The notes under the pieces were generated by a model. It saw only the letters and a program-made list of their open reading frames with translations, was not told the DNA's origin and searched no databases. DNA of 64,000 nt from Cyanophora paradoxa CCMP329 (taxonomy: Eukaryota; Plantae; Glaucophyta): positions 62,001-126,000 of the forward strand of contig QPMI01000208.1 in assembly GCA_004431415.1 (NCBI GenBank), given 5' to 3'. Of the stretch, positions 4,185-43,552 are shown piece after piece. How positions within the stretch are numbered: the first letter of the stretch is position 1; each line of letters begins with the position of its first letter. Both the position numbers and the translations under genes were made by a program.

Positions 4185-5249
4185 ATGGACGGCAAGAGGA
4201 TCAAACCAAAGAAGAAGGGGGGAGGCGATGGCGCGTCTGAGAACGGCGGCGGCAGCAAGAACGGTGGCGGCAGCCAGGCCAGCCATGGATCGGGCGTCTC
4301 TGGCACGTCCAGCAAGAACAACGGTGGCTTGCTGGGCATGGCGGACTATCTTTACACGGCACAGGATATGATATTCGGTGTCGTCTTTCTGGTCCGCTGA
4401 CGACCCCGACCGCGGGCTCAGCCACAGACCTGACGCTCCGTGCTCGCAGATGATGAAGGAGACTGAGCGCAAGAAGTGGCTCGCAATAGCTGAAATAGTC
4501 GCTTTCAACCTCTGGTTCCTCTTCTTCCCCCTCACAGTCTTCACGTACGGGCGCTTCGCTCCGGGCTCAGCTTTTGTGCCGCTCGGCGAGGCGATGTCAT
4601 ACCCTTTCCTACGATACTGGGACTACACTGAGTGAGTGCCGGCGCCGGCGCCTGCCTGCGCCCCGTCCCTAACGCGCCGGCCCGCAGCTACTCGGTAGTG
4701 TACTGGGTGTCCGTCGTCTTGGTGCTCCTTGTGACTGCGAACCTGGCTTTCGTGCGCGGAGGACGCGCGGCGCGCAGCGCAGCCCCGCGCGCGCGCCTGA
4801 CGGATCCCGGCCGCGGCGGCAGGTCACGTGGATCTTCCAGCGGCAAAAGTTCCGCTTCAAGGACCCGATCGTGTACCTCCGCTACTGGGCCAACGCGTGC
4901 ACCTCCTGGCTCGCCGCGCCCCTCCTCCTCATCCTCTCCCAAGTCTACAACTGCCCCCTCTCCGGCGGGCGGCACGTCAACTTCCCCCGTGCGCCGGCGC
5001 CGCGCCCGCCGAGCCGGGGGGCCGGCGGCGGGGCTGACTCGGGGGCGGGGCAGAGCTGGAGTGCTGGTCGATGGCGCACATCCCGCTGGTGGTGATCGCG
5101 GCGGTGGCGTCGCTGGCCCTCGTCATCTTCACGCTCTCCATGGCCGTCTTCTACTACGAGCCGGACCCCCGCAAGGAGCACGTCTTCACCGCCCGCCCCC
5201 ACACCCGCGCCGACTTCATCGCCCAGGCCCGCCGCCGCCCCCGCCGCCG

Positions 5250-5287
<38 letters not shown>

Positions 5288-8200
5288 CCTGAGGGGGCGC
5301 GCCGGGGCTGCAGGTGGCGCTGTACGTGATGTGCATCGAGTACTCCATCACGATTCTGCCGGAGTGGGTCTTCGGGGCGACGTACCTCGTGGCCGGCCTC
5401 GCCGTCCTGTGGTCGATGCTGCAGATGTTCCCGTACTACTGCCAGTGGGTCAACTACGTGCGGATCGGCGTCGCCTCGACGTTCACCTGGTGCGCCATCC
5501 TGGTGCTGGCGGAGAGCCAGTACGCCGAGTGGCAGGGGAACAACCTCACCCTCGCCTTCATCCTGGGCGGCCTCGCCGCGCCGGCCCTCGGCGTCGCCTT
5601 CGCGCGGTGGCGCTTCCACACGCGGTACTGCACGGGGGCGCTGGAGGGCCTGGAGATGAAGAAGCCGTGGCACGTGGAGCTGGCGACGCGCTTCCTGCTC
5701 GAGGACCGCTCGCAGCAGAGCCTCGAGCTGGCGGAGGACATCTTCCTCGAGGGCGTCGACCGCTACCAGACCTCGGCGAACGTCTACGTGTGCTACAGCA
5801 ACTACCTCTACTGGGCCCGCGGCAGCGAGCAGCTCGCCTTCGACAAGGCCCGGCAGGCCTCCAAGCTGAAGCCCCTCCCGGACCACGCCTTCTACATCTA
5901 CTGCAAGATGAACCAGCGGACGCAGTCGATGCAGGGCGGGGGCGGCAAGGGGGGCCCGAGCGGCGCCTCGGACATGCTTTCCTTCATCGAGTTCCAGAAG
6001 AACTTCAGCGGGGCGAAGAAGTACCACCGGTGCGGGGCGGCCGGGGCTGGAGGGGTGCGGTGCGGGGGCGGGGCTGAGGCGCCGGCGCAGGCACGCCGTG
6101 CGGTCGTTCAAGAAGTTCTGGATGATGCTGCTCACGGAGGAGACGGACATGCGGCAGCTCGAGGCCGCCGTCTCCCGCATCGACCGCTTCGAGTCCCGCG
6201 CCCAGAACTTCTACCGCAACCTCCTCTCCAAGCACCCCAACAACCCCCGCATCCTCCGCGCCTACGGCAAATGTGCGGCCCGCGCGCCCCCCCCCCTCCT
6301 CTCTCTCTCCCTCCTCCCCTCTGACGGGGCCGGCGGCTGCAGTCCACGAGGAGGTGCTGAACGACGTCCTCTCCGCCCAAGACTTCTACGACGCCGGTGC
6401 GCCCGCCCTCCGAGCCGGCCCCCGTGGCGGCGGCCCCTCCGCCGAGCCGCGGCGCGCGCGCAGCGGACGAGTTCGAGGACGCGAACGTTGTGGCGACGAT
6501 CGACATGGACGAGGAGGAGGAGGAGGACATGGACCACGAGCTGGGGCAGGTCGTCACCACGCAGAAGGTCGTGGGCAACATCTTCGAGCAGGCCCGCGCC
6601 GAGCAGCAGCAGGCCGTCACCGTCGTCTCCAAGGGCGGCGGCTCCGTGCCCGTGCGCTCGGCGCTCAAGGGCGGGCGCGCGGACGTGACGCAGCTGGGCG
6701 GGTGGGCGGCGGACACGACCTTCGAGGTGCCCGACCCGAACGCGGCGACCAAGAAGACGGCGCGGGAGCCCAAGGACCCCCTCGCCTCGTCCCGCCACGC
6801 CAAGGAGCACAAGGAGGGCGAGGAGGCGCACCACACGCACCGCGGCGAGGGGCACCACACGCACCGCACCGACGGCCACGCCACCGCCCGCAGCGAGAAG
6901 CGCAAGAGCAACCGCAGCAAGCACGGCGTGCGCCGCGCCCTCCGCGCGCCCTCCGCGCCGTGCCTCACGCGCGGCGGCGGCGCAGGAGGAGCTCGAGATG
7001 AAGGACGCGAGCGACGAGGAGGAGGCCGGCAAGGGCGAGGCGGCGCAGGGCGAGGAGGAGGAAGAGGGCGAGAAGTACACCGCGCCCAAGGCCGCCGACC
7101 AGTCGGGGATCGACCTGATGCACGGCTTCGGCACGGAGGGCGTCGGGCGCCCGCCGGCGAAGCGGCGCGCGCCCACCAGCACCCAGATGCTCATCGCCGA
7201 GGCCAAGGTGCCCTTTCTGCATTCAAACGCCCCGCCCGACGCCGGGGCTCAGGGGCCGGGCAGGTGGAGCTGGCGGCCTCGGAGGAGACGCGGGCGATGT
7301 CGGCGCAGGGCGGGTCGCGGGCGAAGGGGGCGCGGACGAGCCCGCGGCGGAGCCTGCAGACGGGGGAGGGCCTGAAGACGTCGATCATCTTCGACGGGGA
7401 GCTGGTGGTGCAGGACGTGGATATGTACTTCAGCGTCGTGTTCGGGCACGACGAGGACGTCCGCGGGCGGCCCCTCGGCGACTTCCTCCCCGCCTTCACC
7501 CGCCCCAAGGGCGCCCCCGCCCCGCTCGGCGGCCTCCCCGGCGCCGCCAACGCCTCCCCGGGGCCCGCCGGCCCGAAGCGCTCGGTGGCCTCGGTGCTGG
7601 GTGAGGAGGCCTACGACGGGGCCGGCGCGCTGAAGAACGCGCTGGCGCGGCGGGACGACGGGAGCACCTTCCTGGCCGCGCTGGAGCCCTGGGAGATGGA
7701 GGTCGGCGACTCGCGCCTCTACCAGGTCACCGTCCGCCGCGCCGAGGTGCGGGAGAACGGAGGCGGCCGGCCCCGGGCTGCGGCCGGCGAAGCTGACGGG
7801 GCGCAGGGCTCCCCCGGGTCGCGCCCGTCGTCGCGGAGCGCCGCGGCGGGCGGCGGGGCGCAGGCGGCGGCAGTCACCCTCCTGGCGGTCCCCGAGCACT
7901 CCCGCCCCGCGAGCGTGGCGAGCAGCGCGGCGCCCGCCGGGCCCACGGCGGACCCGCCCCAGTGGCAGGCCCTCCAGCGGCCCTCCATCGCCGCCTCGGA
8001 GAACGGCCTCGAGAGCCTGCTCGCCGACGTGCGCTCGGGCCCCGCGGCGGGGCCGGCCGGGCCGCGGGCCGCCTCTGACGCCCCCCACGCGCAGCTCCGC
8101 GCCAACTCGGACGCGGCGAACGCCGGGGGGGCGCACGTCCTCTCCAAGTGGGGCCTCGACGAGGAGGACGAGGAGGAGGACAGCGGGGCGGGGACGGGGA

Positions 8201-11200
8201 CGGGCCAGGGCTCGCACGCCTCTCGGGACAGCGACATCGTCGTGCCGCTGAGCGAGAGCACGGGCCTGAAGCAGCGCAAGAAGGGCCGCCCGGGCTCCTC
8301 CGGCTCCGACTCGTCCTTCAAGAAGCCCCTCCCCATCGTCGAGCCGGCGGCCAAGCCCGTCGTCGCCAAGCCGACGGCGGCGGCGCTGGCGGCGCTGGCG
8401 GGCGGGGGGCCCGTGGGCGGCAAGGCCAAGGCGAAGGGCTCGGACGCCGGCGGCTCGGACGACGAGCACGCGCACGAGCACGAGGAGGAGGGCAAGGGCG
8501 GCGGCTCGGACAAGGGCAGCGAGGAGGGGAGCGGCAGCGGCTCGGAGGAGGGCGGGGGCGGCGAGGAGGCCCAGCAGCGCGCCAAGCGCCGCCTGAAGAA
8601 GCTGAACGCCCTCAAGCGCCGCGTCGCCGCCGCGCACACCACCCACAACACCGCCATCAAGTGCGCCGCGCTCCGCGACGCCCCCGGCCCTCCCTCTCCA
8701 GGCGCTGACGGCGGAGGCAGGCGGATGCGGCGGGTGGTCTACCTGGTGCTGATCGTGCTGGCCGGCGCCGCGCTCCTCGGCTACTTCTTCATCAAGAACC
8801 TCCTCGACACCTACATGGTTTGCGGCGCGGCGCCCCGCGCGAGGCGGTGCTGGGGGCGCTGAGGGGCGGGGGCGCAGCTGGGGATCCAGCTGGTGGGGGA
8901 CACGGGCGGGCGGCGGCGCACGGGCAACATGGCTGTCTACGCCCTCCGCTCCGTCCTCCTCCACGTCCGCCCCCGCCCCCGCCCCCGCCCCCGCCCCCGC
9001 CCCCGCCCCCGCCGCCTTGCGAGCGCCGTGCGCAGGGGCACCCCGAGTGGGACCCGGAGAAGAAGATGCTGCAGGAGTGGGCGGGGCAGCTCGAGGCGAA
9101 CCTGGACCGCATGGAGGAGAACCACCTCCACCTCTCCGACTTCTTCACCAAGCAGGCCCGCCCCGCCCCTGCCGCTCCCCGCCCCCCGCCCCCGGCGAGC
9201 GCCGGGTGCGCGCAGGACTTCAGCGTGCGGCGGATCCTCTCGGACGGGGGCGAGACGGGGATGGCCGTCGACGACATGTGGAACGCCGGCTTCGAGGCGC
9301 GCCCGCCGCCGCCCGCGCCGCGCCGCCGGCCCCTGACGCGGGGGCGCGGGGGGCAGATTGTGGACGCGGGGCGGCGGGCGCTGGACCGGATCCGGACGGA
9401 GGGGATCGACGCGGTGCGCAAGAACCGGATCCACCCGCAGGCCGGCCTCGACGACCCCGACATCTACTTCCTCATGAACGCGCGCCCCGGCCCCCGCCCC
9501 GCCCCCCGCCCCCCTGGCCCCCCTGGCCCCCCGGCCCCGCCTGACCCCGCAGCGCCGCGCAGAACACGATCGAGCGCATCCGCCTCAAGTTCATCGAGGC
9601 GGCGGACATCACCGTCGACGCGGCCGAGAGCCTCTTCGGCAACATCCGGTGCGCCCCGCCGGCCGCCCGCTCCGCCGCCGCCGCCCGGGCGCGAGGCGAG
9701 GCGGCGGGGGCGCGGGGCAGGACCTTCCTGTACATTGAGATCTGCCTCGTGACGGTCCTGATCGTGGTCCTGGCGCTGGGCTTCTTCCGCCCCACCATCC
9801 TCCGCGTCCAGGGCGAGAAGGAGCGCGCCCTCCTCCTCTTCTACGAGGTCCGCCCCCGGCCCCGAGCGCCCGGGCGAGGGCCCGCCCGCGCTCGCTCGCT
9901 CAGGGGGCGGGGTGCAGATCCCGCGGGCGACGGTGGCGCGGATGGCGGGCCTGGGGAAGAAGTCGGCGGACGACGAGGACGAGGAGGACATGGACGACGA
10001 CGACTTCGACGTGCGACCCGCCCCGCCCCGCCGCCCGCCCCGCCCCGCCCCGCCGCCCCTGACGGGGGCCCCGTGCAGGACGACTTCGAGGAGATGGACG
10101 CGGCCAAGGCGGGGCAGGGCGGCAAGGAGGCCGGCAAGGAGAAGGAGCGCTCGGCGGAGGACAAGGCGAAGCACATCCGCGAGCGCATGCAGGCCCGCAA
10201 GCGCGGCGTCGACGCCGTCACCATCAAGTGCGGGAGCCGTGCCCCCGCCCCGCTCCGCGCGTCGCGTCCTGCCTGACGCGAGGCGGCCAGGTACACGGTG
10301 GCCTTCTTCGCCCTCTTCGCCGTCTTCCTCGCCTGGTTCGTCGTCTCCTACGTCTACTCCGCCAAGGTCCGCCCCCCGCCTCCCCCCGCCCCTGCACCCG
10401 TCGCGTGACGGGCCCGGGGGCGCAGTGCTACTCGTTCGCGCGGGAGCGGAACCTCTCGGGGCTGCGGCGGAGCACGCCGGCGGCGATGCAGTACTACGCG
10501 CGGGAGCTGATCTTCGACCCCGACGCCTACGACTTCAACCTCGAGATGCTCAAGAAGCACACGCACGAGACGGAGGAGCTCGAGCGGGGCCTCCTCTACG
10601 GCTCGGAGCACCTCAAGCTGCCCGGCTCGGCGATGCGCTTCAAGGCGCAGGACGAGCTGATGTTCGGCAAGCCGTGCGCCTCGGACCCCAAGGGCTGCAC
10701 CAACTCGGCCGACAACGGCGTCCACCGCCTCCTCATGCGCTTCATCCAGGCCCGCCCCCGCCCCCGCCGCCCCCTCGGCCACTCCCCGGCCCCTCGCTGA
10801 CTGCCCCGCAGGAGGCGACCTTCCTCATCGACTCGCCCCGCGAGCTGCTCACGCCGAACAACACGCACCTCAAGTACATGAAGTCGGTGGGGCTGGAGGA
10901 CAAGAGCCAGGGGATCCACGGCGACCTCGACCTGGGCCTGCGCCACAGCGTCACCATCTTCGAGGAGGAGGCCAAGACGACCGTCGGCGAGTTCCTCCTC
11001 TACCACCAGGTGCCCCCGCCGGGGCCTCTCGGGCGGGGCCGGGGCCGGGGCCGAGGCGGGGGGCGGGGCGGGCGCAGATGATGATGGGGCTCACGTTCCT
11101 CACGATCGTGCTCTCGTACCTCCTCGTCTTCCGCGTCATCGTCTCCGCCCTCAACGACGAGTCCCGCCGCACCACCTTCCTCATGCGTGCGTCCCCCGCC

Positions 11201-11334: not shown

Positions 11335-12275
11335 GCGCGCCTTCTGTAGGGACCGCTTCTCGCCCGCCAGATGCTTCTTTCAACATTCACTTATGTATTC
11401 TAGATCTGTAGCCGGCCGGCCCCCTCGGGGGTTGTAGTTCGCCGCTGCCGAGCGCCTGTAAATACCGACCGTGTTTGACGTCGTGGCTCCGACGAGACTA
11501 ACGCGTCGTCTTTAATTGATCGTATAAATTGTATGCAGGAGTTTAGGAAGCTTGCTTTCAAGTGTTCTCTCTATCGCAGTTTGTCCAGTGTCTAGAGTGC
11601 TTGTCGATTTTCAGTCGCGTGTCAGTGTGATTTCAATTTGCAACACGTTTACATGTGCTGAGAGCGAGGCACTGCGGCACACGCTCTGCGTGCACGCGCG
11701 CGCTATAGCTAGCGCGCGCTGCGCGGCCGGCGACGGCGCCGCACGGGGCCGCGGATCCGATCGCGAGTTGGCGCCGGCCGCAGCGACCGTCGGACCGCGA
11801 CCGTCGATTGGACGTCAAAGCGCTATATATATATAGCTAGCAGGCCGGCGCCGGCGCGCGACGCGCGCATCATGCATATGCATATGCATGTGGGAATTGC
11901 AAGAATTCGAATCGATATCGAACGTTAACTTCAGAAAAAGCTGCAGCTGCGCCGCGCGCGGGCCGCGGCTGCGGGCCGGGCCGGGGGGCGCCTGCGCGCG
12001 CCTGCCAGGCTGCATGCTCGATGCGCGATATCATCATAGTATGTCATAGTATCATAGTCGATGCTGCAGCCTGCGCGCGCGCGGCCGCGCGGCAGCGCTA
12101 GCGCAACGCCATGATGTATGCGCGTTGGATATCGATAATACATATCGATAGCATCGAAGTCGCCGGCCTTCGCTCGATCGATATCAGCCTGCATCTGCAG
12201 CTGCGCGCGGCAGCGCTGTAGCTAGCGGAAGGCGTACCCCCCCGCCCGGATCGAGACCTCACAATCCTACTGCGG

Positions 12276-15200
12276 ATGGCCGGCCCGTCCGAGGGCCCCG
12301 GCTCGGCCCCCGTGCCTATCCGAGTGCAATCGGTCGCATTAGCAGTGGTCCTCTCGGCGGATCTCAAGGTTCTCGGCTGCTCTGAGAACTTCGATCGTCG
12401 ACACAGGCAAGCGATCCGCACCCGCGATGCGCCCCGAAGAGGGGCGATCGCTTTATATGTCTTGCCCGTGATTGCGTGTCGGTGATACGCACCGCCCCGA
12501 CCTCGCTGACCGACGTACGCGCAGTGATCTTGGCAAGGGCCCGTCGGTGGCGGAGCTCCTAAGGAAAGGGCTTTCGTCGCTTCTTGCGGATTCGAGTATT
12601 GAGCATCTAGCGGAGACCGTGACCCGCCTTGTGCGTGCCCACGTAGTGATTGATTGGCCACGATTCGCCCTTCTCACCGGCGACCTCCGGTGGGCAGATC
12701 GCAGTCCAAAAGATAAAAGCGATCGGAGCACCACCGCCGGAAGACGAGAAGAACGGATACGATGACCCCCTCGTGCTGGAGGCGGCCAGCCCCGAGGGCG
12801 AGGAGTTCACTGGTTTCGTACAGTATCGCGACGACGAAATCCTTCTAGAGCTCGATCCGACATGGTCTTTGAGCGACAACGATCGGGCATTGAGGAAACG
12901 GAGGTCGGAAAAGCTTAGCTGCCGCACAGCTCGTGATACTGATACAGGCGAGCAGGTCCGGCATCCGCTACGCAGCCGAGATGATGATGGCAACTGCGAG
13001 TGGAAAGAAGCGTACGAGCGGCAGCAGCACGCAGAACGCTGGCACGCCTGTCGCTCGCTCGGTGTCGCCGGTGCTGCAGACACTTAGTGCCGAAGACGAG
13101 GAGTCTCTTCTCTGCGCCCAAGCAGTAGACGCCATTTTTGAACTCACAGGGTGTGTTTTCTGCATATATGCGCGGGGGGACGTGTCAGCACCTGCTGACT
13201 CGCACGAGCAGATACGACAGAGTTTGCGTGTACCGACTGCGTGCGCAGCTTTTCGCGCTTAGCTTAAATGTAGTTCTTCTTCTTTCACTCATGATGTCTC
13301 TCGCAGAGGAGAACTATCATGGCCAGGTGCTGGCGGAGCGCCTCTCCGATCCCTCGACCGTCCCCTCCTACCTCAACCTGTTCTTCCCGGTCCGCGGGGA
13401 GCTCCCTGTTGTCGTTCGCATGTTTTCACCACCTAGCAGGCCGGAGACATCCCCTCCAAGCAGCGAAAGACCTTCGCGCTCCGGCCGCTCCGCATGATCG
13501 TGGACACAGAGGCTCCGCCCTGTCGCATCATGCGCCTCTCCGAAGACGGATCCTCCATTGTAGATGCCCCCCTGAAGCCCTCCTTCCTCCCCCAGTTCGC
13601 TTCCGTCCACCCCTGCCACGCCACCTGTCCGCGCCCTCCCGCCCCGCCCGCCCGCCGGCGAGCTTGCCCTCACGCGCGTCGCCCTGCAGACATGCGGAAC
13701 ATGGGCACCCCCGCCTCGATGTCCGGTACGCCTCCCGCCCTCCATGTTCCCCACGAGGCCGCTCACGCCCGCTCCCCCAGCGACCGTCCTGGCGCCCAAG
13801 CCGGCTGCGATGGTCGGGGAGATATCCGAAGCCACCCGCAAGATGTGAGCGCGGTTGCTCCAGCTCGACCTCGCCCTCGGCCGGCGGCGCTGACTGGGGC
13901 GTCCAGGTGGGGCCTGATCGTGTGCCACCACCGGACGGCGAAGGTGGTGGACTGGCACACGCGCGCCGACTGCATGCTTGTGGCCGACGCCCTCGGCGCC
14001 GCCCTCGAGCGCCTTTACGAGCGCAAGGCCGTCGCCGGCGAGCGCCGCGCCGCCGTGCGCCGCCCCCCCGCCCCTCCCGGCCGGCCCTCCGCCCTCCTGG
14101 ACCCACGCGCCCCGCGCAGGACGTGAATGGGGCGCTGATGCTGCGGGTGGCCACGCCGGCGGCGATGGCGGGCCCGGTGAAGGACTCGCCGCTGCTGGGG
14201 GTGGTGGACGAGAGCGCGGGAGCGGCGGTGGTGCGCAACGGGCGCGTCGTGGAGATGCAGGGGCGGTGCCCGCCGGAGGACTTCATCCTAGACCTGTGCG
14301 ACTGGATGCGCAAGTCGGGCCTCGGCCCGATCTGGCACTCGGACTGCCTCTCCCAGCACATGGAAGCCGGCCGCCGCGTCTCCAATGTCGCCGCCGGCGT
14401 CCTGATGGTCCGCGTCCTCGGCGGCAACCCGGGCCTCAGCGCCGGCGCAGCGGCCGCCGCGCAGCGCGCCGGCTCCCCCTCCAACGACCAGCAGGAGTCC
14501 TACATGATGTGGTTCCGCCCCGAGAAGCGCGCAGAGCGCCTCTGGGCCGGCCAGGCGGGCAGCAACCACGCGGCCGGCGGCGGCACGACGGAGACGCACG
14601 TGAGGAGCGCGGGGCCGGCGGAGGCGGCGGCCGGGGCGTCGAAGGCGCTGTGCACGACGTCGGGCCCGCGGAGCAGCTTCGACCCGCAGTCGGAGATCGT
14701 GACGCTGCACAGCAAGTCCTTCTCGGTGGAGGACTTGGGCGCCGCGCAGGCCGTCTTCCGCATCCTCAACTCCCTCGACGCCGACGTGCGCCCCCGCCCC
14801 CGCCCCCTGCTCGCAGCGCCCCTGCGCCCGCCTCGGCCCCGCCGACCGCCGGCCGGCAGTTCCTCGCCCGCATGGCCTCGTTCCAGCTGGCGCCGGAGCG
14901 GGCCGCGATGCGGGGGATGCCGGGCGGGAAGCGCCCGCTGGCGCTGCCGCCCATCGCGAAGCCGCAGGAGGACCCCGACCTCGACCACCTGCGCCCCGCC
15001 AAGGAGGAGCACGCGACGCTGCTCGAGGCGCACCCCTCGCTCCGCTACTCGAAGACGGCGGCGGTCGGCCTGCTCGAGCTGACGGGCTGCGGGGCCCTCT
15101 CGGAGCGCGTCGACCCGCTGACGTACGCGGAGAAGCTGGCGGAGCTCTTCGCGGTGCTCGACGCCGTCGCCGCCCAGCACGGCGTCGAGCGCATCAAGGT

Positions 15201-16243
15201 CTCCGGCGAGGTCTACGTCATGGGCGCCGGCACCGCCGCCGCCAACCCCGGCGACAAGCCGCCCTCGGCCGCCGCCGCCGCCTCCTCGGCCGTGCGCTGC
15301 GCGCTGGCGATGCGCGAGGCGATCGCGCAGCGGCCGCCGCTCTTCGGCGTCAAGGTCGGCCTGCGCGCCGGCGTGCACGTCGGGCCCCTCGCCCTCGGGC
15401 CCGTCGCCGGCGGGGAGCGGCCCCAGGTGGAGGCCTACGGCCCCGCCCTCCGCACCGCCCTCGAGCTCCTCTCCTCCTCCGCCTCGTCGCGCGTCCACGT
15501 CAGCCAGGTCCGCCCCGCCCCGGCTCCAGCCCCCCGCCCCGCCGCTTCCTTTTGCCGCCTCCCAATTCCTTTTCGCGCAGGTCGTCAAGGACCAGCTGCC
15601 GGCGGCGGAGTTCGCGCTGGAGCCGGCGGGGGCGGGGGCGCCGCAGGAGGGCGCGTCGGGCGCGTCGGGCCCCGGCGCCCTCAACTCGCTCATGCGCTTC
15701 TTCGGCGTGGAGGACTCGGACGACGAGTCGCGCGCGGCGGCGGCGGCGGCTGCGGCCGGCGGGGAGGCGGCGCCCGGCCCCAACGCGTACGCGACGTCGG
15801 CGCTGATGAACCAGCCGGCGGCGGCGGCGCGGGGCAGCGCGCCGGCCCCCGCCACGTACTACGTCGAGTGCCTCGCCGGGGCCGGCGCGTGCATCGAGGC
15901 GCGGCGCGGCAGCGTCGCCTCCTCCTCGGGGGGCGCCGGGGGCCTCCTCAACAGCCTCTCGGCGGACGAGGAGGAGGGCCCGGGGGGGCTCGGCAGCCTC
16001 GACTCGCACAAGCTCTCGCCCCCCTCGTCCCTCTCCCAGCTCCCCGCCCCGCCCGGCACCCTGCGCCCCATCCCCGCCACGCCCGCCGGCGCGCCGGGGC
16101 AGGCGGCTGGGGCCGTGCACCCGACGGCGGCGACGCGGGCGCTCGTGGGGCACCACCTCTCGGAGCACCATCCGACGCCCTCGGGCCCCATCCCCGCGCG
16201 CCGCAAGATCCCCTCCGCCACGTCCCTCGGCCCCGCCTCCTGA
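12276..16243 (+). CDS. Phytochrome (PAS-GAF-PHY) with C-terminal degenerate class III nucleotide cyclase domain
   Basis: Spliced GAF reads GYDRVCVYRL..GQVLAE..YLNLFFPAGDIP..VHPCHATYMRNMG..WGLIVCHH. PHY has WFRPE..WAG..PRSSF. Cyclase fold ERIKVSGEVY..LRAGVHVGP..RVHVS at ~15050-15510. One probable 1 bp error near 12885. Confidence 0.9.
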
Positions 16244-16934
16244 CAGCCCCGCCCCGCCCTCGTCCCCCGCTCCCACCCCACCGGCCCCCCTGCTCCAGCC
16301 GGCTGTATTCCTATTCACTCCCCACGCATTCCCCCGGCCGCTTAGTTGCCAGATGCATTTTTCGCGCAAGAAGGGACGCTCGCCCGCCCCAGGTATTGAT
16401 TCGTAGCGCCACTGCCGCCTAGTTTGAGCAGCTGATCGGTCCCGCTTCCCTCTTGCTCCTCGCTTTTCGGCGACCGTTTCTCGGCGCCAACGAGACGACA
16501 CGCGACGCATGAGATGTCTCCAAGTGAATTGTAAAGAAGTATTCGTTGATGACCAAGCGCGGCGCCTGCGAGCCGGGGTGCCACGGTGGGTCCGGGGCAA
16601 GCACACGGGCGGGTCACGCATACAGACAACCGTTGAACCCTGAACTTCGGAAATTGTTTTTAAGAATCGCAACGCCCTAATCATGAGGGCTGTGAGGGCC
16701 GCACCTAGGCCATGGGATCGGTTCTCGGTCTCCGAGGCTCGGTCTCGGTTTCGATTTCGATTTAATTACAAAATGTTCGATTTCGATTTGCCCACTCAGC
16801 TGCAGTTGAGCCCGGGCGTAGATTCACGTGAACTGCTAGTCAGACCGCTAGCTGACGTCGCGTGTCGCGCCAAAATGCAGGGTTATACACGCATGTACAC
16901 GTTTACACTCAAATACAGGCCCGGGGCGGGAGGC

Positions 16935-19034
16935 TCAGAGCTCGGGGACGGTGGGCTGGATGGCCGCCTGCGGGGGGGCGCCGGCCCCGAGGTGAGGGGC
17001 GAGGGGGGAGGGGGGCGGGGCGGGGCGGGGGCGCCGACCTTCGCGTCAGCGTGCTTCTTGATGGCGAGGTCGATGCAGCGCTGCAGGAGGCCGTCGTACC
17101 CCAGGCCGGCCGCCTGCGCCCCGTCGCCGCGGGGCTCAGCGCGCGCGACGCCGGTGGGGGGAGGGAGGGGGGGCGAGGGGCGGGCCTTGGCAGACTGGGG
17201 CATGAGGGAGGTGGGGGTCAGGCCGGGCAGCGTGTTGATCTCGAGCGCGTGCGGCACGCCGTTCACGTCGAGCTGCGCCCCCGCCCCCGCCGCCGGGTCG
17301 GGTCGGGTCGGGAAGGGGCGGGGCGCGGGGCGCGGGGGCGGGCGCCTTGACGTCGGTGCGGGAGTAGGTCTTGCAGCCGAGGGCGACGTGGAACGCGATC
17401 GCGATCTCGTGCAGCTCGTCCCGCAGGCTCTGCGCGCGCGCAGCGCTGAGCGCCCCCGCCGCCTCGCCGCCCCGGGGAGCCCAGGGCGCGCACCTCGGGG
17501 ATGTCGGCGGGGCAGACCTCCTCGACCGCCCCCGCCGTGTACTTGGCCACGTAGTCGAACCACTCGCCCTCCCTGCCCAGCGCGCCCCTCGGCGGGGGCG
17601 GGCGGGCGGGCGGGCGGGCGGGCGGGGCGGGCGGGGCGTACGCCTTGGTCTTGATCTCGACGATGGGGAAGCCGCGGGGGACGCCGTTCTCGTCCTCGAC
17701 GACGGGGACGGTGAACTCGCGCCCGGGCAGGTACTTCTCGAGGAGCACGTACTCCTCCCCCCCGTTCAGGTAGCCCAGGGCCTGCGGGGGCCCCCCGCGT
17801 GGGCGGCCCCGCGGCCCCCAGCGGGGCGGGGCCGGCGGGGGGCACCTTCTCGAGGAGGACCTGCTCGTTCTTGCACGGCTCGACCCCCACGCTCGAGCCG
17901 CTCTTCGCGAGCTTGAGCATGAGGGGGTACCCCAGCGCCGCCCCCGCCTGCCGAGCGTGCGAGGCTCGAGGGTCGACCCCGGGGCGCTGGGGCAGGCGGG
18001 AGGGAGGGGGCGGGGGACCTTCTTGAGGTCGTCGGGGGTGGTGGAGCCGGCGCGGAGGGTGAAGTCCTGCGCCACGCGCACCCCCGAGGCCTGCCCCCGT
18101 CCCGCCTCGCACCCACGCCGCGCGGCCTCGCGGGGGCGGCGCGGGGGAGCGGACCTGGGCGACGCGCTTGGCGAGGCCCTTGTCCATGCCGACGGCCGAG
18201 CCGGCGACCCCCGAGCCCTGGTACGGGATGTCCAGCAGGTCGAGCGCCCCCTGCCCGCCCCGCCCCGCCCCGCTCACATCCCGCGCAGCTCAGCGAGCAC
18301 GGGGGGGGGGCGCGCCTGGAGGCGCCCGTCCTCGCCGTCGGCGCCGTGCATGGCGATGAAGGCGCAGTCGGGGCTCCACTTCTTGATCGCCACCAGGCAC
18401 GCCGCGTAGTCCTCGCCCTTCCCCAGCACGTTCCCGTCTGCCGCGCCCCGCCCCTGAGCCGCGGGGAGGCGGGCTGGCGGGCCCGGGTGCCGCACCCGCA
18501 TCCTCCCACGCCGAGGTCCCGTCGGCGTTCAGCTGGAAGCGCTGCGCGACGTGGCCCATCTCCTTCAGCGTCTTCATCACGCCCGTGCCCGTGCGCATCG
18601 ACACCTCCCACTCCAGCGTCCGGCCGCCCATAATCACGGCGACCTTCTTGGGGTCTGCAAGAACCCGGCGCATGAGGCAGGCAACCGCGCAATTCCGAAA
18701 CCGGCAGAAATACGCGGACCGGCGACCTTCGCCTCGACAACAACGCGGGCAACGCCGGCCTGCTTGGCGGGCCGGGCAGCCTTGGCGACACTGAAACGAC
18801 GGGTGGTGAACTGAGAAGCGGGCGCAGCCTCGCCCTGGAAGAAAGTAGAAGACGAGCTAGCTGCGGCCAAACGCTGGCGCTGGAGCGGGGAGGCCGAACT
18901 GCGCTGCGCCGCCGCGAACTGAGCCGGCCTCACCTTCGAGCCTGCGCGCGGAATCGGGGATCGGCGAGGAGATTACATGGGATCGCGGGCAAGCCCTCAC
19001 CGGTGACGGCGACGTTGAGCGCGAAGGCGTCCAT
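16935..19034 (-). CDS. ddl: D-alanine--D-alanine ligase with plastid (muroplast) transit peptide, about 12 introns
   Basis: Motifs KVAVIMGGRTLEWEVSMRTG, FIAMHGADGEDG, IPYQGSG, MDK, GSSVG, EKYLPGREFTV, FDYVAKY, LEINTLPGLTPTSLMP. The ~80 aa Ser/Ala/Arg-rich N-extension begins MDAF. Confidence 0.93.
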
Positions 19035-26739: not shown

Positions 26740-29700
26740 ATGGTGGCACCAGGGGCCCCCTCGGGGGCCCCTTACAGTTTTTACATTAACAGTCCCTCCT
26801 CGAATGCATCGCTACCCTATAGGTTCCCGAAGAACAGGTTCGCCCTCCGTTCAACATCTTCTTGAGCGCCAGCGGCGCCGTTGACGCGCCCCGGCGCAGA
26901 ATCTCGACCACAAAATACACGCTGCTCAGCTTCCTCCCCAAGAACTTGCTCCTGCAGTTCAAGAAAGCGTACAAGTGAGCCGCCTCGAGCGCTCGTGCTC
27001 CGCCTGCGCCGCCTGCTTCCTTCCTTCGCTGCAGCTGACGAATTGTGTTGTGACAGTCAATATTTCCTCCTCATTGTGCTCGCCCAGTTCCTGCCTGGCG
27101 TCTCCCCCGTCGACCCCGTGGTCAACATGCTGCCGCTAATCTTCGTGCTCGCTGTCACTGCAATAAAGGATGCCCTAGAGGATTACAGGCGCTACCGCGC
27201 CGATAAGGTGAGAAGTGCTTGCGGCGCCGCGCTCCGGGGATCAAAAGGCTCAGTGTCGTGCAGGTCACGAATGAAGCCGAGTACCTGGTGCTTCCCCGCG
27301 GCCAGCACCATCCAGGCTCGAAGCCGGAACATGTAGAGTGGACTCGGGTTCAAGCCCAGCGACTGCAGGTGCACCGCATCCGCCGCTCGCCACGCCCTCC
27401 CGTCTCAGCGCGCCTGCGCAGGTGGGCGACATCATCATGATAGAAAAGGAGCAGTTTCTTCCCGCGGATGTTCTGCTGCTGTCAACGGCGGATCCCGCGG
27501 GCACATGCTACGTTGAGACTGGGAACCTGGACGGGGAGTCGAATTTGAAGCAGATGCAGGCCGTCGCGGCCACGAACGAAGTCTTCCGCACGCCGGAAGC
27601 CTTCGCGACGGCCCGCGGTCGCGTTTTGTGCGCTCTTTCTTCGTTGGATTCCTTTTGCAGAGCCCTGACGCCCTTGCGCAGCTGCGACGAGCCGAACAAC
27701 TTGTTGTACCAGTTCAGCGGGCACCTTTGCCTGGAGAACGGCCTGAAACGCTCAAACAGCCTCGCCGCAAACCTGGGGACGCCGCTGTCGTCGGCGCGCA
27801 AGGCGGGGAAGGACCTGCCAATGACCGAGCAGCAGCTGCTGCTGCGGGGCGTTCGCGTCCGCAACACGCCCTGGGCCGCCGGCGTCGTCGTCTACACAGG
27901 CGCCGACACCAAGCTATCCCGCAACTCCCGCCTCCAGTGAGCCGCACCGCCCCTTCCTCTTCCGCTGCTTTTGCCAAGGGGCGCCCCGCAGCCCGCCGAT
28001 CAAGGTCGCGCACATGGAGCGGCAGATGAACCGCTACATCGTCTGGATTTTCATCGTGCAGGTAATTATATGCGTCGTCCTTGGTGCCTACTCGGGCAAC
28101 TGGCTGGCGGAGAACCGCTCCAAGTGAGCCGCGCTGGCGCCCCCGCGTCCGCCTTTCCACCTCCTGAGGCGCCGGTGCCCGAAGGGCGTGGTACCTCGCG
28201 GGGGGCGACAGCAACTCGCCGGCCGTCTTCGGGGTCCTCCAGGTCTGCCCGTACCCCCTCCGCGCCCCGCCCCCTCTCCGCGCCTGGCGCGAGCTTCCCG
28301 CCAGTGCATCACGTACTTCGTGCTCATCTGCCGCATCGTGCCGACCGCCCTCATCGTCTCCGCTGAGCTCGGTGCGGGCCGCCGGCGCCCCGCTGGCCGG
28401 CTCGCCTGACGGGGGCGGCAGTCCGGGTGGCCTCGGTGGCGTTCATGGAGTGGGACGTGCAGCTCGCGGGGGACCGGCGGCGCCCCTCGGAGACCCGCAT
28501 GCGCGTCAAGACCTCCAACCTCCTCGACGAGCTGCCCCGGGTCCCCCCCCCGCCCTCCCCTCCTCCCGCCCCCACGCCCCCTCTGAAGGCGGCCGGCGGG
28601 GCGCAGGTCGAGCACGTCTTCGCGGACAAGACGGGGACGCTGACGGAGAACCGGATGGTCTTCACGCGGGCCTGGGTGCCCCGCCCCGGGCGCTACTTCA
28701 GCGAGGCGGGCCCCGGGGGCCCGGGGTCGCTCTGGCGGGCCCTCTCCTCGGGCGAGAAGGGCGCCGACGCGGCGGCGGAGATGCTGCTCGCCATGGGCCT
28801 CTGCAACGCCGTCGTCCCCGACCCCAGCGCCAGCGCCCCCCACGAGCGCGCCGACGACGACTCGGGCGCCGAGGAGGAGGAGGAGGAGAAGGGCGGGCGC
28901 GCCGCTGCGCCGCCAGACGCTCCGGCGGGCCCCGCGGCGCCCGTCAGCATGAACCTGGAGGAGAGCCAGGAGTCGGGCCTGTCCGAGGGCGGGCCGCCCG
29001 TCAAGCTCATTCCCGCAGAGTCGAAGGCTGCGGGGCGCCTTTCGCCCCGCGGCGCCGCCGGCCCCGAGGAGCGGCCCGCGCCCCGCAAGCCGCTCAACGA
29101 CCCTCCCCGCGAGGGCCGCGAGGGGCCCGACCCCCCGACGCGTCCCCCCTCCGCCTACTCCCTCTACGCCCCCTCCACCGTCCCCGACACCGACGCCCTC
29201 GCCTCGGCCCCCTCGGCCCCCCCCGCCCTCGCCTCGGCCCCCTCGGCCCCCCCCGCCCGCAGCCCCGTACCCCCGCTCCCCGTCGCCAGCGCCCAGCGCT
29301 CGCCCCGGAGCTCCCCCCGCGCACGCGCCTCGGCCAGCCTACCCCCCATGTCTCCCCACTCGCTCGAGCCCATCCGCTGCCCCCCGCCCCTGCCGCTTAG
29401 CCTCGCCCCCGGGGGCCCCTCCCGCGGCCCTTCCCGCCCCGGATCGCCCCTCCACGCGGCGCCGGCGGCGCGGATGTCGCTGAGCGCAGAGCCGGCGGCG
29501 GGGCCGGCGCGTGCGGCGTCGGCGCAGCCGCCAGCGGCCTACAGCGGGCTCGTATACATGGGCCAGTCCCCGACGAGGTCGCCCTCGTCAAGGTTCGCCG
29601 CCCTCGCCCGTCCCGCGCGCCGCCGCCGGCGGCCGAGCGCGCGGCCGGCGCGCAGGCGGCGCGCACGAACGGCGTGACCCTCGTCGCCCGCTCCGCCGAG

Positions 29701-32510
29701 GCGGTCCGGGTCTCCTTCTTCGTGCGCCCCGCCCCGCCCGGGCCGCTGCTACCACCGGCGGCGCGCGTGACACGGCGTGGCGCGGGGGCGCAGGGCGTGG
29801 AGAAGGAGTACCGGGTGGTGGCGACCCTCAAGTTCACCAGCGAGCGCCGCCGCATGTCCACCGTCGTCCAGGCCCGCCGCCCCTCCCCCGCCCGCCCCGC
29901 CGGCCCCCGCCCCGCCCCTGACGGGCCTTGAGCAGGAGGTCGAGCAGGAGGGGGCCGAGCCCGGCCGCGTCCTTCTCCTCACCAAGGGCGCCGACGAGGA
30001 GATCATGGGGCGCCTCGCGCACCCCGCCAGTGCGCCCCGCGCCCCGCCCCGCGCCCGCCCGCCCCGCCCCGCCGCGGCGAGCGTGCTGTGCAGCGGCGGG
30101 CGAGGCGGCGGCCGTGGCGGAGGCAGGCGAGGCGGTGGCGCGCTTCTCGACGGAGGGGCTGCGGACGCTGCTCTGGGGCGCGCGGGAGATGCCGTCGGAC
30201 GAGTTCGGGGAGTGGCTGGCGCGCTACGAGGCGGCGGAGTGCATCGCGGAGCCGGCGGTGCGGGCGGAGCGGGCGGAGGCGCTGGCGGACGAGCTGGAGC
30301 GGGGCCTGCGCCTCGTCGGCGTCTCCGCCGTGGAGGACCGCCTGCAGCGCGGCGTCCCCGCCGCCATCGCCTTCCTCCGCGCCGCCGGCGTCCGCGTCTG
30401 GCTCCTCACCGGCGACATGCAGGCCCGCCCGCCCGCCCCTCCGCCACCCGCGCCCCGCGCCGCCCCGCGCTCACGCGTGGCCGGCGCAGGAGACGGCGAT
30501 CAACATCGCGCACTCGTCTCGGCTGCTGGCGCCGGGCATGGAGCTCCTCAAACTGCACGCCACCAGCGCCGAGGAAGCCCGCCAGCAGCTCGCCGAGTTT
30601 GCCGCGAAGGCACCCTCACCCGCCCCCGCTCCCGCGCGCCGGGCCGCCCCGCCCGCCGCCGCCTCTTCGGCGGGGGCGCTGCCGTCGTGCCCGACCCGCC
30701 GGGGCCGGTGACGCCGGCGAGCTCGTGCGGGGCGCCGACGACGGCTCCCTCGGCGGCGCGGCCGGGGCGGGCCCTGGTCGTCGACGGCCGATCCCTGGCC
30801 CTCGTCCTCGAGTCGCCACCCCTCACCGTGCGGCCTGCCCCGCGCCCCGCGCCCCGCCGGCGCTCTCACGCCGGCCGGCAGTCGATGCTGCTGGACGTGG
30901 CGCACGGCTGCGAGGCGCTCGTCTGCTGCCGCGTGACGCCGCTGCAGAAGGCGCGCGTGGTGCGGGCCGTGCGGGAGGCCGACCCTGAGCGCGTGCTGCT
31001 GGCGATCGGGGACGGGGCGAACGACGTGGGGATGATCCACGAGGCGCACGTGGGAGTGGGGATCCTGGGGAACGAGGGGACGCAGGCGGCGCAGGCGTCG
31101 GACATCGCGGTGTGGCGCTTCGCGGCGCTGCGGCGGCTGCTGGCGCTCCACGGGCGCCAGAACGCCCTCCGCATGGCCGCCCTCATCCACTCCATCTTCT
31201 ACAAGGACGTCCTCTTCGCCCTGCCCCTCCTCTGGTTCTCCCCCTTCATGGCCGCCACCGGCCAGGCCCTCTACGCCGACTGGATCTTCGCCGGCTTCGA
31301 CGTCGTGCGCCCGCGCCCCGCGCCGCGTCGCCCCGCGCGCGCGCGTCGACGGGCGCGCGCGGGGCCGGCGCGCAGGTCTTCACCTCGCTGCCGCCGATCG
31401 TCCTCGGCTGCTTCGAGAAGGACCTGGACGACTCGCTGGTGCCCCTCACCGAGCACCCCGCCGCCCTCCGCACCTTCCGCGACGACTTCCCCGTCCGCCA
31501 CCCCCGCGCCCCGCCCCCTGCGCCCCGCGAGGGAGGCGACCCCCGCCCGCCTTGCGCAGAAGCGCACCTTCTCCGCCCGCACCCTCGCCCAGTGGTACTC
31601 CGCCGCCGTCCTCCACTCGATCGGTGCCCCGCGCCCCGCCCCCGCTTCCCTTCCCGCGCACGCTGACGCCCCCGGGCACAGTGATCTTCTTCGGGGTTTA
31701 CCTGGGCGTGCGGGGCGGCGGCGAGGTCGTCAGCGGCGGCTCCACGCGCTCCCTCTACGACACGGTGCGCGGGCCGGCGGCGCCGCGCCGCGCGGCGGCC
31801 CCGCGTGAAGTGCGCGGCGGGGCGGCGCAGGGCGTGCTCGTCTCGACGGCCGGCATGCTCGTCATCCTCCTCAAGCTCGCCCTGCACACCATGGTCCGCC
31901 CCGCCCGCCCGCCGCGGGGCCGCGGGGCCGGGCGGCGATGGCGGGTGGGGGGGCAGCACTGGACGTGGGTGCACGCGGCGGCCTCGGCGGTCTCCTTCCT
32001 CGCCTACGTCGTCTGGATCGCCCTCGACTCCAGCGTCGGCGCCTCCCCGGGCTTCCAGGTGGGCGGGAGCCGGCGCCCGCCCGGGGCGCCGCGCCGAGCG
32101 GGGCGCAGGGGACGCTGCGGACGAGCGCGGGGGACGCGGCGACGTACCTGCTCGTGGTGGCGACCGTCTTCGCGGCCCTGCTGCCCGACGCCGCCGCCCG
32201 CTTCGCCCGCCGCAACTTCGCCCCCGCCCCCTGGGAGCGCCTCCAGGACGCTTACGCTGCCCTCGACGCGGGGCCGGCCTCGCCGCCGGCCTCGCCCGGA
32301 GCGCCGGGGACGGGCCGCGCGAGCGTCGCCCCCTCGATGGCGCACAGCGGGTCGACAGCGAGCGTGGGGACCCTCGCGGGGCGCTCCTCGGCGGGGCCCC
32401 TGCCCCGCACCCCGAACGCCAACATCGACCCCCTCCCCGCTGCTCCTGCGCCTGCAGCCAGAGCGGCTCCTCGCGGTCCTCCCGGCGAGGCCGCCGCGTA
32501 CCCGTCCTGA
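26740..32510 (+). CDS. P4-type ATPase (phospholipid flippase), many introns
   Basis: NRISTTKYTLLSFLPKNL, YVETGNLDGESNLK, DKTGTLTEN, FTSERRRMS, KGAD, EGLRTL, EDRLQ, WLLTGD, CCRVTPLQKA, GDGANDVGMI. Confidence 0.95.
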
Positions 32511-42314: not shown

Positions 42315-43552
42315 GCGGAAGATGCCGAGGGGAACGTCGGGGTCCTCGGGCTCGGCGCCCTCGGCATGCTGGGAACGCCAAAGCCCTCGGCTCCCTTGTA
42401 GGCCGCGGGCGTCGAGGAAGAGCCATCGGCGCCGCCGGGCTGCCAGACGGGGTGGTCCTTAGGGAGGCGCGAACACGCGTCAGGGCCGCCGTTCTGTTTG
42501 CCCGGGCGATAGACAATATCAAAATCGTAAGCCTGCAGGAGCAGGGACCAGCGGCCTAGCCGACCCGTCGTCGGATCGAGGCTTTTCAACCACTGGAGGG
42601 CGTGGTGGTCGGTTCGGACCAGGAACTGGGGCCCGCCTAGCAGATAGTGGCGCCAATACTTGATGGCCCACACGACGGCGAGACACTCGAGTTCCGTAGC
42701 CGAGTAGTTCATCTCAGCCGGCAGCAAAGTGCGGCTGATAAAGGCAAGGGGCGCTCGACGCCGTCCTTGTCCGTCTGGCTCAGAATCGCGCCGATTGCGT
42801 ATGTACTGGCGTCCGTCTGGAGTATGAAGGGCTTCGAGAAATCCGGGAACCGCAATATGATATCGCGACCCAGCAGTTCTTTCAGCTCCTTAAAGGCACG
42901 GTCGGCGGCACCGCCCTCAGGCCAACTCCAGACGGCGTCCTTCAATAGAAGGCGCTGCATAGCGTAAACCACTTTGGAGAAGTTCTCAACAAAGCGGCGG
43001 TAGTAACCGGCGAGGCCCAGGAACGAGCGGAGCTCGTCCGCGTTCTTAGGCGTCTGCCAGTCCGAGATCACCTTGGTCTTCGCGGGGTCCTGCCGGATCC
43101 CCTCGGCGGAGATGCGGTGGCCTAGAAGGTCGATTTCTGGCACGCAGAAGCGGCACTTCGACGGCTTCAGGCGCAAGTTCGCCTTGGAGATCGCTTCGAA
43201 AAGCGCCTTCAAGTCCAAGAGGTGCTGATCGATCGACGGCGAGAACACCGTGATGTCATCGATGTAGGCCACGACACAGGTCGTCAGGAGAGGGCCCAAG
43301 ATCGCGGTGATCGCACGAGAGAAGGCCGCAGGGCCATTGGTCACCCCGAACGGGGTCACGCGCCACTGGAAGTGACCCCAGGGGACGACGAATGCAGTGT
43401 ACGCGCGCGAGCCGGGGTGGAGAGGGAGCTGCCAGAAGCCGGCGGTAGCATCCGCCGTCGAGAAGACCATCGAGCCGCGCAGGCGCTCGAGCTGGTCGTC
43501 GATGCGGGGCAGCGGGAATACGTCGCGCTCCGTGATCTGATTAAGCCTTCTC
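42315..43552 (-). CDS. pol: pol: reverse transcriptase (N-terminally deleted) plus RNase H, frameshifted
   Basis: FPLPRIDD, GFWQ, PFGVTNGPAAF, YIDD, FLGLAGYYRRFV, LQTDAS, NYSATELECLAVVWA, TDHHAL. Confidence 0.93.

What the first reader, a model, noticed from the sequence alone, without database searches (positions are those of the whole stretch)
12276..16243. Phytochrome with a pseudo-cyclase output instead of a histidine kinase
Seen: a complete PAS-GAF-PHY with bilin Cys (HPCH), DIP and PRxSF, followed directly by a class III cyclase fold. Both metal-binding Asp are Glu (LLELTG, SGEVY), the N-x3-R catalytic pair is lost (LRTALE), and the ATP-selecting Lys is kept. Known: eukaryotic phytochromes typically carry kinase-type outputs. 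Inference: a natural light-regulated pseudo-cyclase that may act as a heterodimer partner, inhibitor or nucleotide sensor; of optogenetic interest.
Basis: partly seen in the sequence, partly recalled or inferred. Interest (0 to 1): 0.85.

Follow-up and report, generated by a model that had tools for sequence, protein, structure and literature searches.

The report
Algal phytochrome with a dead cyclase
The alga Cyanophora paradoxa expresses one spliced gene that joins a red-light-sensor (phytochrome) module to a cAMP-cyclase fold that has lost its catalytic chemistry, a rare natural version of a pairing otherwise built in the lab, but light control of cAMP by it is not shown.

Summary
Single RNA contigs from three studies show all 12 splice joints, including PHY-to-cyclase (intron 14786-14859). 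The result is one 1053-aa ORF, identical to Cyanophora paradoxa tig00000881_g5234.t1. It folds as PAS-GAF-PHY with the bilin Cys, DIP, His, Tyr and PRxSF residues kept; the B-ring Arg and the tongue Trp are lost. The class III domain cannot be an active homodimer: both metal Asp are Glu, N-x3-R is R-x3-E, and the triphosphate Lys is gone. The metal-side Arg and purine Lys remain, a partly C1/NeoR-like pattern. A 29-residue Pro-rich break and a decayed transducer element separate sensor from cyclase, which argues against direct helical coupling. Best reading: a photoreceptor with a non-catalytic dimer/partner module, like the pseudo-kinase of plant phytochromes. A NeoR-like half-enzyme is the exciting but less likely rival. 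No orthologue or other PHY-cyclase fusion turned up, and this scan did not note it on other DNA. However, a 2026 review already lists 'cyclase' among algal phytochrome outputs (lineage not stated in the text held), so the architecture is probably catalogued. I found no description of the pseudo-enzyme state.

The parts
12276..16243 (+). Complete CDS, 13 exons, 1053 aa. Exons: 12276-12406, 12525-12630, 12698-12903, 12956-13150, 13212-13240, 13307-13389, 13440-13626, 13690-13725, 13781-13844, 13907-14054, 14120-14785, 14860-15507, 15581-16243
   Evidence: Joints in RNA contigs; open frame without internal stop; identical to P0003 = EukProt Cyanophora paradoxa tig00000881_g5234.t1
12407..12524 (+). 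Intron 1, non-canonical GC-AG
   Evidence: Joint 12403-12522 with 3-base slide; ends GCAAGC..GCGCAG
12324..12859 (+). Divergent N-terminal PAS domain (aa 17-133); knot residues V17-Q18 kept, G21 of IQPHG lost
   Evidence: AlphaFold2 strands and helices at pLDDT 65-92 by 10-residue block, except block 91-100; alignment; no Pfam hit
12866..13055 (+). Disordered insert between PAS and GAF (aa 136-181) with a basic RKRR cluster, a possible NLS (weak)
   Evidence: pLDDT <50; run of four basic residues, P about 0.06 against shuffles
13080..14024 (+). GAF domain (aa ~190-385). Kept: R216, Y220, Y244, D253-I-P, R259, R268, C309-H310, Y313, S322, S324, H353. Changed: conserved Arg->A304, Met->C218, Asp->K296
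   Evidence: Pfam GAF; comparison with 89 phytochromes; PDB alignments
13614..13616 (+). Canonical bilin-attachment Cys309
   Evidence: Aligns with the C of plant HGCH and glaucophyte xCH
14120..14773 (+). PHY domain (aa ~396-613) with WAG and PRSSF tongue motifs, two low-complexity inserts, and tongue Trp->Q585
   Evidence: Pfam PHY
14786..14859 (+). Intron 11 (phase 0, GT-AG) between the PHY exon and the cyclase exon
   Evidence: Joint 14785-14860 with 255 letters each side in three studies
14860..14913 (+). Post-PHY helix (aa 618-635), resembling the post-PHY linker of glaucophyte GPS proteins
   Evidence: Helix 616-635 in both models; alignment A1
14914..15000 (+). Pro-rich disordered break (aa 636-664, 7 Pro) ending in a decayed cyclase transducer element; only the invariant Pro663 is kept, 27 aa before the first metal site
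   Evidence: pLDDT <50; Pro in 84/84 relatives, spacing 27 in 71/84
15055..15625 (+). Class III pseudo-cyclase core (aa 683-848; interrupted by intron 12, 15508-15580)
   Evidence: Pfam PF00211; confident model, Foldseek E about 1e-12 to RhGC, the AC5 C1 domain and Rv1625c
15076..15078 (+). E690, first metal site (Asp in 97/97 relatives); the following P-loop F-T is C-G
15196..15198 (+). K730, adenine-selecting Lys, kept
15208..15210 (+). E734, second metal site (Asp in 96/97)
15364..15366 (+). R786, metal-side triphosphate Arg, kept (97/97)
15430..15432 (+). E808, adenine-specifying Asp changed to Glu (Asp in 96/97)
15451..15465 (+). R815-x3-E819 in place of the catalytic N-x3-R (each 96/97)
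15626..16240 (+). 205-aa low-complexity Ala/Gly/Pro/Ser tail; replaces the KGKG hairpin (Lys->Q855)
16244..16554 (+). 3' UTR covered by the transcript contig; TGTAA at 16530-16534 lies 20 nt before the contig end (possible poly(A) signal, inference)
   Evidence: X1 contig ends at 16554

Best explanation
An expressed Cyanophora paradoxa phytochrome of the plant/glaucophyte/cryptophyte type whose output is a catalytically dead class III cyclase fold. Shown: one spliced ORF, an intact PAS-GAF-PHY fold, and loss of the catalytic residues. Inferred: the GAF domain attaches phycocyanobilin at Cys309 and photoswitches, probably with altered dark reversion because of Arg->A304 and tongue Trp->Q585. 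The cyclase fold makes no cAMP or cGMP; it serves as a head-to-tail dimerisation or partner-binding module, loosely tethered through a Pro-rich break. Light would then act mainly through the state of the sensor module (partner binding, localisation), as in plant phytochromes with their pseudo-kinase. Any effect on cyclic nucleotides would be indirect, by binding and damping host class III cyclases.
For: Splicing and expression in three studies. GC at third codon positions is 0.97-1.0 in the PHY, cyclase and tail exons, with no stop in 1053 codons. The photochemical core residues are kept: 55 of 76 conserved columns, against 59-67 for glaucophyte GPS proteins and 54 for a cryptophyte-type PEK. 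Of the six catalytic residues listed for a Chlamydomonas cyclase (PMC2576301), only the Arg (R786) is unchanged, while 93 of 97 relatives keep D,D,K,D,N,R. The fold itself is predicted with high confidence, so structure is kept while chemistry is lost. The linker helix is broken (pLDDT <50, aa 635-663), and the transducer element has Leu->Asp/Arg changes; engineered phytochrome-cyclases rely on a continuous coiled coil into that element (PMC5995499). Pseudo-enzyme outputs are established for plant phytochromes (PMC4525182).
Against: All three catalytic-pocket Asp became Glu while nearby non-catalytic acids were lost (D->P812, E->L821). The rough chance of three D->E is 0.005 (post hoc), which suggests the pocket still binds a metal or nucleotide rather than being a bare scaffold. 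No orthologue was found, so purifying selection cannot be shown. No dimer could be modelled, and no partner was tested.
Confidence: 0.45

Rival explanations
1. NeoR/C1-like half-enzyme: inactive alone, it heterodimerises with a host class III cyclase, supplies the metal side (E690, E734, R786) to one composite active site, and so puts cAMP synthesis under phytochrome control.
For: The asymmetry matches chytrid NeoR and mammalian C1: N-x3-R absent, metal side retained (PMC12264004). The best full-length eukaryotic hit aligns to a C1-like degenerate domain (P0004), and AC5 C1 ranks second in Foldseek. Other notes of this scan report several host adenylyl cyclases in the genome (unchecked).
Against: NeoR and C1 keep Asp, not Glu, and Glu occurs at neither metal site in 97 relatives. 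The P-loop F-T is C-G. The linker is broken and the transducer element decayed. No partner cyclase lies in the 64-kb window, whereas chytrid partners are often neighbours.
Confidence: 0.18
2. Nucleotide sensor: the homodimer keeps a non-catalytic pocket (K730, E808, E690, E734, R786) that binds ATP or cAMP and tunes the phytochrome's dark reversion or partner binding, integrating light with energy or cAMP state.
For: Acids are kept at all three pocket positions together with the purine Lys and the phosphate Arg. A non-catalytic nucleotide site regulates heterodimeric rhodopsin cyclases allosterically. Three RRxS motifs, a PKA-type consensus from my own knowledge, occur (P about 0.015, post hoc).
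Against: Longer side chains at five pocket positions (three Glu, R815, E819) could fill the site or salt-bridge each other instead (inference). The triphosphate Lys is lost.
Confidence: 0.15
3. Decaying paralogue: a once-active phytochrome-cyclase under relaxed selection, still transcribed but no longer signalling or even binding bilin efficiently.
For: Very long branch (2-3.4 substitutions per site, the longest in each tree). Loss of the B-ring Arg, many inserts, and lower GC3 (0.6-0.7) in the 5' exons. No orthologue was found. Other notes of this scan report several degenerate phytochromes in this genome (unchecked).
Against: Intact 3.2-kb frame with 12 precisely spliced introns. Nearly all photochemical residues (C309, H310, D253, Y220, Y313, H353, R579) survive despite that divergence, which neutral decay would not spare.
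Confidence: 0.15
4. Non-canonical but active cyclase: the Glu pair binds Mn2+ and R815 replaces the transition-state Arg from one helical turn away.
For: Charges are conserved in kind at the metal sites, and an Arg remains on helix alpha4.
Against: An acidic E819 sits where the phosphate-binding Arg belongs, the Asn and Lys are gone, and no relative among 97 has this set. NeoR, which lacks only NxxxR, is already inactive alone.
Confidence: 0.05

Closest known systems
Glaucophyte phytochrome sensors (GPS; CparGPS2 = P0021, Gloeochaete P0012)
   Same: Same lineage of host, PAS-GAF-PHY with the GAF Cys, and shared PHY features (WxxDCLSxHxE; Phe for the Trp of the usual PW motif). CparGPS2 is the best BLAST hit among the proteins held.
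   Different: No PAS-histidine kinase-REC output. It keeps His at 353 where all four GPS have Tyr, and has lost the Arg they keep. It is not nested in the GPS clade in any tree; placement is unresolved (AU p 0.32 for a joint clade).
Algal phytochrome with a 'cyclase' domain drawn in Fig. 1a of PMC13150293 (after Rockwell and Lagarias 2020)
   Same: Phytochrome core with an adenylate/guanylate cyclase domain; may be this protein or its kind.
   Different: The figure is not held and the source review could not be read, so lineage and catalytic state are unknown. No mention of a pseudo-enzyme was found.
Chytrid neorhodopsin (NeoR)/RGC heterodimeric rhodopsin-guanylyl cyclases
   Same: Far-red photoreceptor fused to a class III domain that lacks NxxxR and is inactive alone (PMC12264004).
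   Different: Rhodopsin rather than phytochrome. NeoR keeps both metal Asp and a coiled-coil linker, and has a known partner.
Engineered bacteriophytochrome-cyclases (IlaC, PaaC/PagC, DdPAC) and the natural cyanobacteriochrome cyclase cPAC
   Same: Bilin photosensor joined to a class III cyclase (PDB 6FHT is among the fold hits).
   Different: These are active enzymes. PaaC/PagC was built with a continuous helix into an intact transducer element. The first three are artificial; cPAC uses a cyanobacteriochrome GAF, not PAS-GAF-PHY.
Canonical plant phytochromes (histidine kinase-related domain)
   Same: Phytochrome whose C-terminal enzyme fold has lost its catalytic residue (PMC4525182).
   Different: Different fold (kinase rather than cyclase), no PAS-PAS repeat, and a long disordered tail here.

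Membership tests
Canonical (knotted) phytochrome | PAS-GAF-PHY tridomain in one chain | tested here: met
   One spliced ORF; Pfam GAF and PHY; PAS by predicted fold, Foldseek E about 1e-32 to full modules
Canonical (knotted) phytochrome | Bilin-attachment Cys in GAF with DIP, His, Tyr and tongue PRxSF | tested here: met
   C309, H310, D253, Y220, Y313, H353, P578-F582; B-ring Arg and tongue Trp are lost
Canonical (knotted) phytochrome | Covalent bilin binding and reversible photoconversion | not testable with these tools
   Needs recombinant protein and spectra
Glaucophyte phytochrome sensor (GPS) | C-terminal PAS plus histidine kinase with conserved His | tested here: not met
   No PAS, HisKA, HATPase or REC hit after PHY
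Glaucophyte phytochrome sensor (GPS) | Sensor module groups with the GPS clade | tested here: inconclusive
   Falls on the eukaryotic side on a very long branch; query+GPS, query+plant/cryptophyte and query+bacteria are all unrejected
Class III nucleotidyl cyclase (fold) | PF00211 domain and class III fold | tested here: met
   Pfam 57.8 bits against a cut-off of 21.9; Foldseek rmsd about 2.1-2.5 A over about 160 residues
Active homodimeric class III adenylyl cyclase | Two metal-binding Asp | tested here: not met
   E690 and E734; Asp in 97/97 and 96/97 relatives
Active homodimeric class III adenylyl cyclase | N-x3-R on helix alpha4 | tested here: not met
   R815-x3-E819
Active homodimeric class III adenylyl cyclase | Lys/Asp adenine pair and triphosphate Arg/Lys | tested here: not met
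   K730 and R786 are kept; Asp->E808 and Lys->Q855
C1/NeoR-like heterodimer half | NxxxR absent | tested here: met
C1/NeoR-like heterodimer half | Metal-binding Asp pair retained | tested here: not met
   Both are Glu, and the P-loop F-T is C-G
C1/NeoR-like heterodimer half | Forms an active heterodimer with a partner cyclase | not testable with these tools
   No multimer prediction or assay available; no partner in the window
Class IIIa cyclase with transducer element (CTE) | Hydrophobic LLxNILP element continuous with the sensor helix | tested here: not met
   Only L658, L661 and P663 match; the element is preceded by a Pro-rich disordered segment, and an HMM without the query does not extend over it

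The most novel reading that the evidence does not exclude
A natural phytochrome half-enzyme: light-switched PAS-GAF-PHY gates a heterodimer in which this protein's Glu-Glu-Arg metal side completes, or blocks, the active site of a host adenylyl cyclase. Together with the phytochrome-phosphodiesterase noted elsewhere in this genome, this would give a glaucophyte direct phytochrome control of cAMP.
Probability: 0.18. Interest if true: 0.85.

Novelty: new variant of a known kind. Interest (0 to 1): 0.55.

Why it matters
How algal phytochromes signal downstream is largely unknown. This gene is an expressed natural example of a phytochrome tied to the cyclic-nucleotide machinery in the earliest-branching plastid lineage. 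It also shows a second, independent route to a pseudo-enzyme output (cyclase rather than kinase). It gives a compact test of whether a Glu/Glu pseudo-cyclase can act as a half-enzyme, inhibitor or nucleotide sensor. Its sensor keeps His where GPS proteins have Tyr, lacks the B-ring Arg and has an extra pocket Cys (C218), so it is a useful natural variant for spectral tuning. As an optogenetic tool it is a weak starting point unless heterodimer control is shown.

Tried and rejected
Two separate genes or a frameshifted pseudogene: rejected. The apparent frame break at 12900-13090 is a 52-nt intron, and every joint is in the RNA contigs. Sequencing error at the catalytic codons: rejected, as no differing letters were listed for any of the four runs. 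Orthologues or other PHY-cyclase fusions: none in exon-wise homologue searches, in the exhaustive 1.84-billion search with the PHY exon (14 hits; of the 10 non-self hits scanned with Pfam none carries a cyclase), in 80 metagenomic phytochrome loci or 80 bacterial cyclase loci (capped samples), in plasmids or in the Atlas (only clusters of 50 or more). These blanks are not proof of absence. A partner cyclase in the window: none. Exon shuffling at intron 11: ambiguous, because the start of exon 12 resembles the GPS post-PHY linker, so the junction may lie inside the exon. Phylogeny: careful IQ-TREE runs did not finish; quick trees and AU tests do not place the sensor. No tree of the cyclase was built. 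Papers not held: Rockwell 2014, Duanmu 2014, Rockwell and Lagarias 2017 and 2020. The Cyanophora genome paper does not mention phytochromes. Diurnal expression tables were truncated and use other gene ids. Later full-length steps used the database's own protein P0003.
Full report
Source and gene model. The window is GC-rich eukaryotic DNA with short introns. Laying public contigs on 11900-16700 gave one contig per run, in three different studies, carrying the same 12 splice joints. A fourth run (X14) is unspliced and serves as DNA control; no differing letters or indels were listed for any run. The runs are only guessed to be RNA, but the joints show it. The 13 exons give one stop-free ORF of 1053 aa; intron 1 is GC-AG and the others GT-AG. 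A search with the cyclase exon, by reference, returned a 1053-aa protein, P0003, identical to my model: EukProt Cyanophora paradoxa tig00000881_g5234.t1. The 'two separate genes' refutation therefore fails.

Sensor. Pfam finds GAF and PHY. PAS is too diverged for Pfam, but AlphaFold2 builds it, and Foldseek matches complete PAS-GAF-PHY modules at E about 1e-32. Against 89 phytochromes the protein keeps C309, H310, D253-I-P, R216, Y220, Y244, R259, R268, Y313, S322, H353, W537-x-G and PRSSF. It has lost the Arg at 304 (99% conserved), Met218 (now Cys), Asp296 and the tongue Trp at 585. From my own knowledge of Cph1 and phyB, the Arg binds the B-ring propionate, and its loss alters but usually does not abolish bilin binding or photoconversion. 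A held preprint says only that such a change is expected to reduce chromophorylation. All four glaucophyte GPS sequences have Tyr where this protein keeps His353, so their unusual photocycles cannot be assumed. Trees put the sensor on the eukaryotic (glaucophyte/plant/cryptophyte) side on the longest branch, but AU tests reject none of the placements tried.

Output. Residues 683-848 form a confident class III fold. Using the residue map of a solved algal cyclase (PMC2576301) and 97 relatives: on the metal side, Asp->E690, Asp->E734, the P-loop F-T->C-G, and Arg786 is kept. On the other side, Asn->R815, Arg->E819, the triphosphate Lys->Q855 with the whole KGKG hairpin gone, Lys730 kept and Asp->E808. 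93 of 97 relatives have the full D,D,K,D,N,R set and none has Glu at a metal site. An active homodimer is therefore very unlikely (inference from established mechanism). The three pocket Asp all became Glu while two neighbouring non-catalytic acids were lost (rough chance 0.005, post hoc), which hints that the pocket is still constrained.

Coupling. The PHY helix runs to residue 635, then a 29-residue segment with seven prolines is predicted disordered. A remnant of the cyclase transducer element survives: Pro663 lies 27 residues before the first metal site, as in 71 of 84 relatives, but three of its Leu positions are Asp or Arg. Engineered phytochrome-cyclases depend on a continuous coiled coil into this element (PMC5995499), so direct mechanical gating is doubtful here. 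A 205-aa low-complexity tail follows.

Mechanism. I favour (0.45) a photoreceptor whose dead cyclase fold is a dimerisation or partner-binding module, analogous to the pseudo-kinase of plant phytochromes (PMC4525182), with any effect on cAMP arising from binding host cyclases. Rivals: a NeoR/C1-like half-enzyme (0.18; precedent PMC12264004, but NeoR keeps its Asp pair), a nucleotide-binding sensor (0.15), a decaying paralogue (0.15) and a non-canonical active enzyme (0.05). Shown: gene structure, expression, folds and residue losses. Inferred: bilin binding, photocycle, dimerisation and partners.

Distribution and prior knowledge. No orthologue or second PHY-cyclase fusion was found, within the stated limits of each tool; the nearest PHY hits include four glaucophyte-type phytochromes with PAS outputs. 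No second cyclase lies in the window. The Fig. 1a legend of a 2026 review lists 'cyclase, adenylate/guanylate cyclase' among domains of algal phytochromes, citing Rockwell and Lagarias 2020 (PMC13150293). I could read neither the figure nor that source, so I cannot say whether it depicts this gene, but the architecture is probably catalogued. I found no paper on this gene or on a pseudo-cyclase phytochrome. Earlier notes of this scan report a phytochrome-phosphodiesterase, several receptor cyclases and several degenerate phytochromes in the same genome; these are unchecked leads, and none describes this fusion on other DNA.

Verdict. A real, expressed, rare fusion; a new variant of a known kind. 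Interest 0.55: surprising to a phytochrome specialist and easy to test, but a single-species orphan with a dead enzyme, doubtful coupling and a probably catalogued architecture.

Noticed in passing
window 16900-18670 (-): Intron-rich D-Ala-D-Ala ligase gene directly downstream, tail to tail (Pfam Dala_Dala_lig_C and _N); fits peptidoglycan synthesis of the glaucophyte plastid. Probably unrelated to the phytochrome.
   Followed up: partly
window 11680-12230: Intergenic stretch upstream of the ATG packed with short palindromes (runs of CG, AT, GATATC, GCATGC, CTGCAG); only short imperfect repeats were found. Function unknown.
   Followed up: partly
window 12276-13240 (+): The first five exons have GC3 of 0.60-0.72, while the last four have 0.96-1.0: a steep 5'-3' gradient over the most diverged (PAS) part. 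Not explained.
   Followed up: no
window ~4800-11190 (+): Large multi-exon membrane-protein gene upstream with acidic low-complexity loops; resembles TmcB-like proteins from memory. No Pfam hit on the three ORFs tested.
   Followed up: partly
run X13: A run labelled as a different organism holds 6% of the gene's words: a possible orthologue in a related species, or contamination.
   Followed up: no
P0021 and P0013: CparGPS2 and a related protein carry an N-terminal HLH domain before PAS-GAF-PHY (Pfam); agrees with scan note s1-572092.
   Followed up: partly
L034:3683-7234 (+): Metagenomic intronless cryptophyte-type PEK phytochrome (GAF-PHY-PAS-Ser/Thr kinase-RING by inspection of the translation).
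   Followed up: no
window 13225-13227 (+): Cys218 replaces a Met conserved in 96% of relatives beside Tyr220; a candidate second chromophore-contacting Cys (speculative).
   Followed up: no
window ~27600-32400 (+) and ~43000-43540 (-): Coding stretches that read like a P4-type ATPase and a reverse transcriptase (by inspection). Not tested.
   Followed up: no
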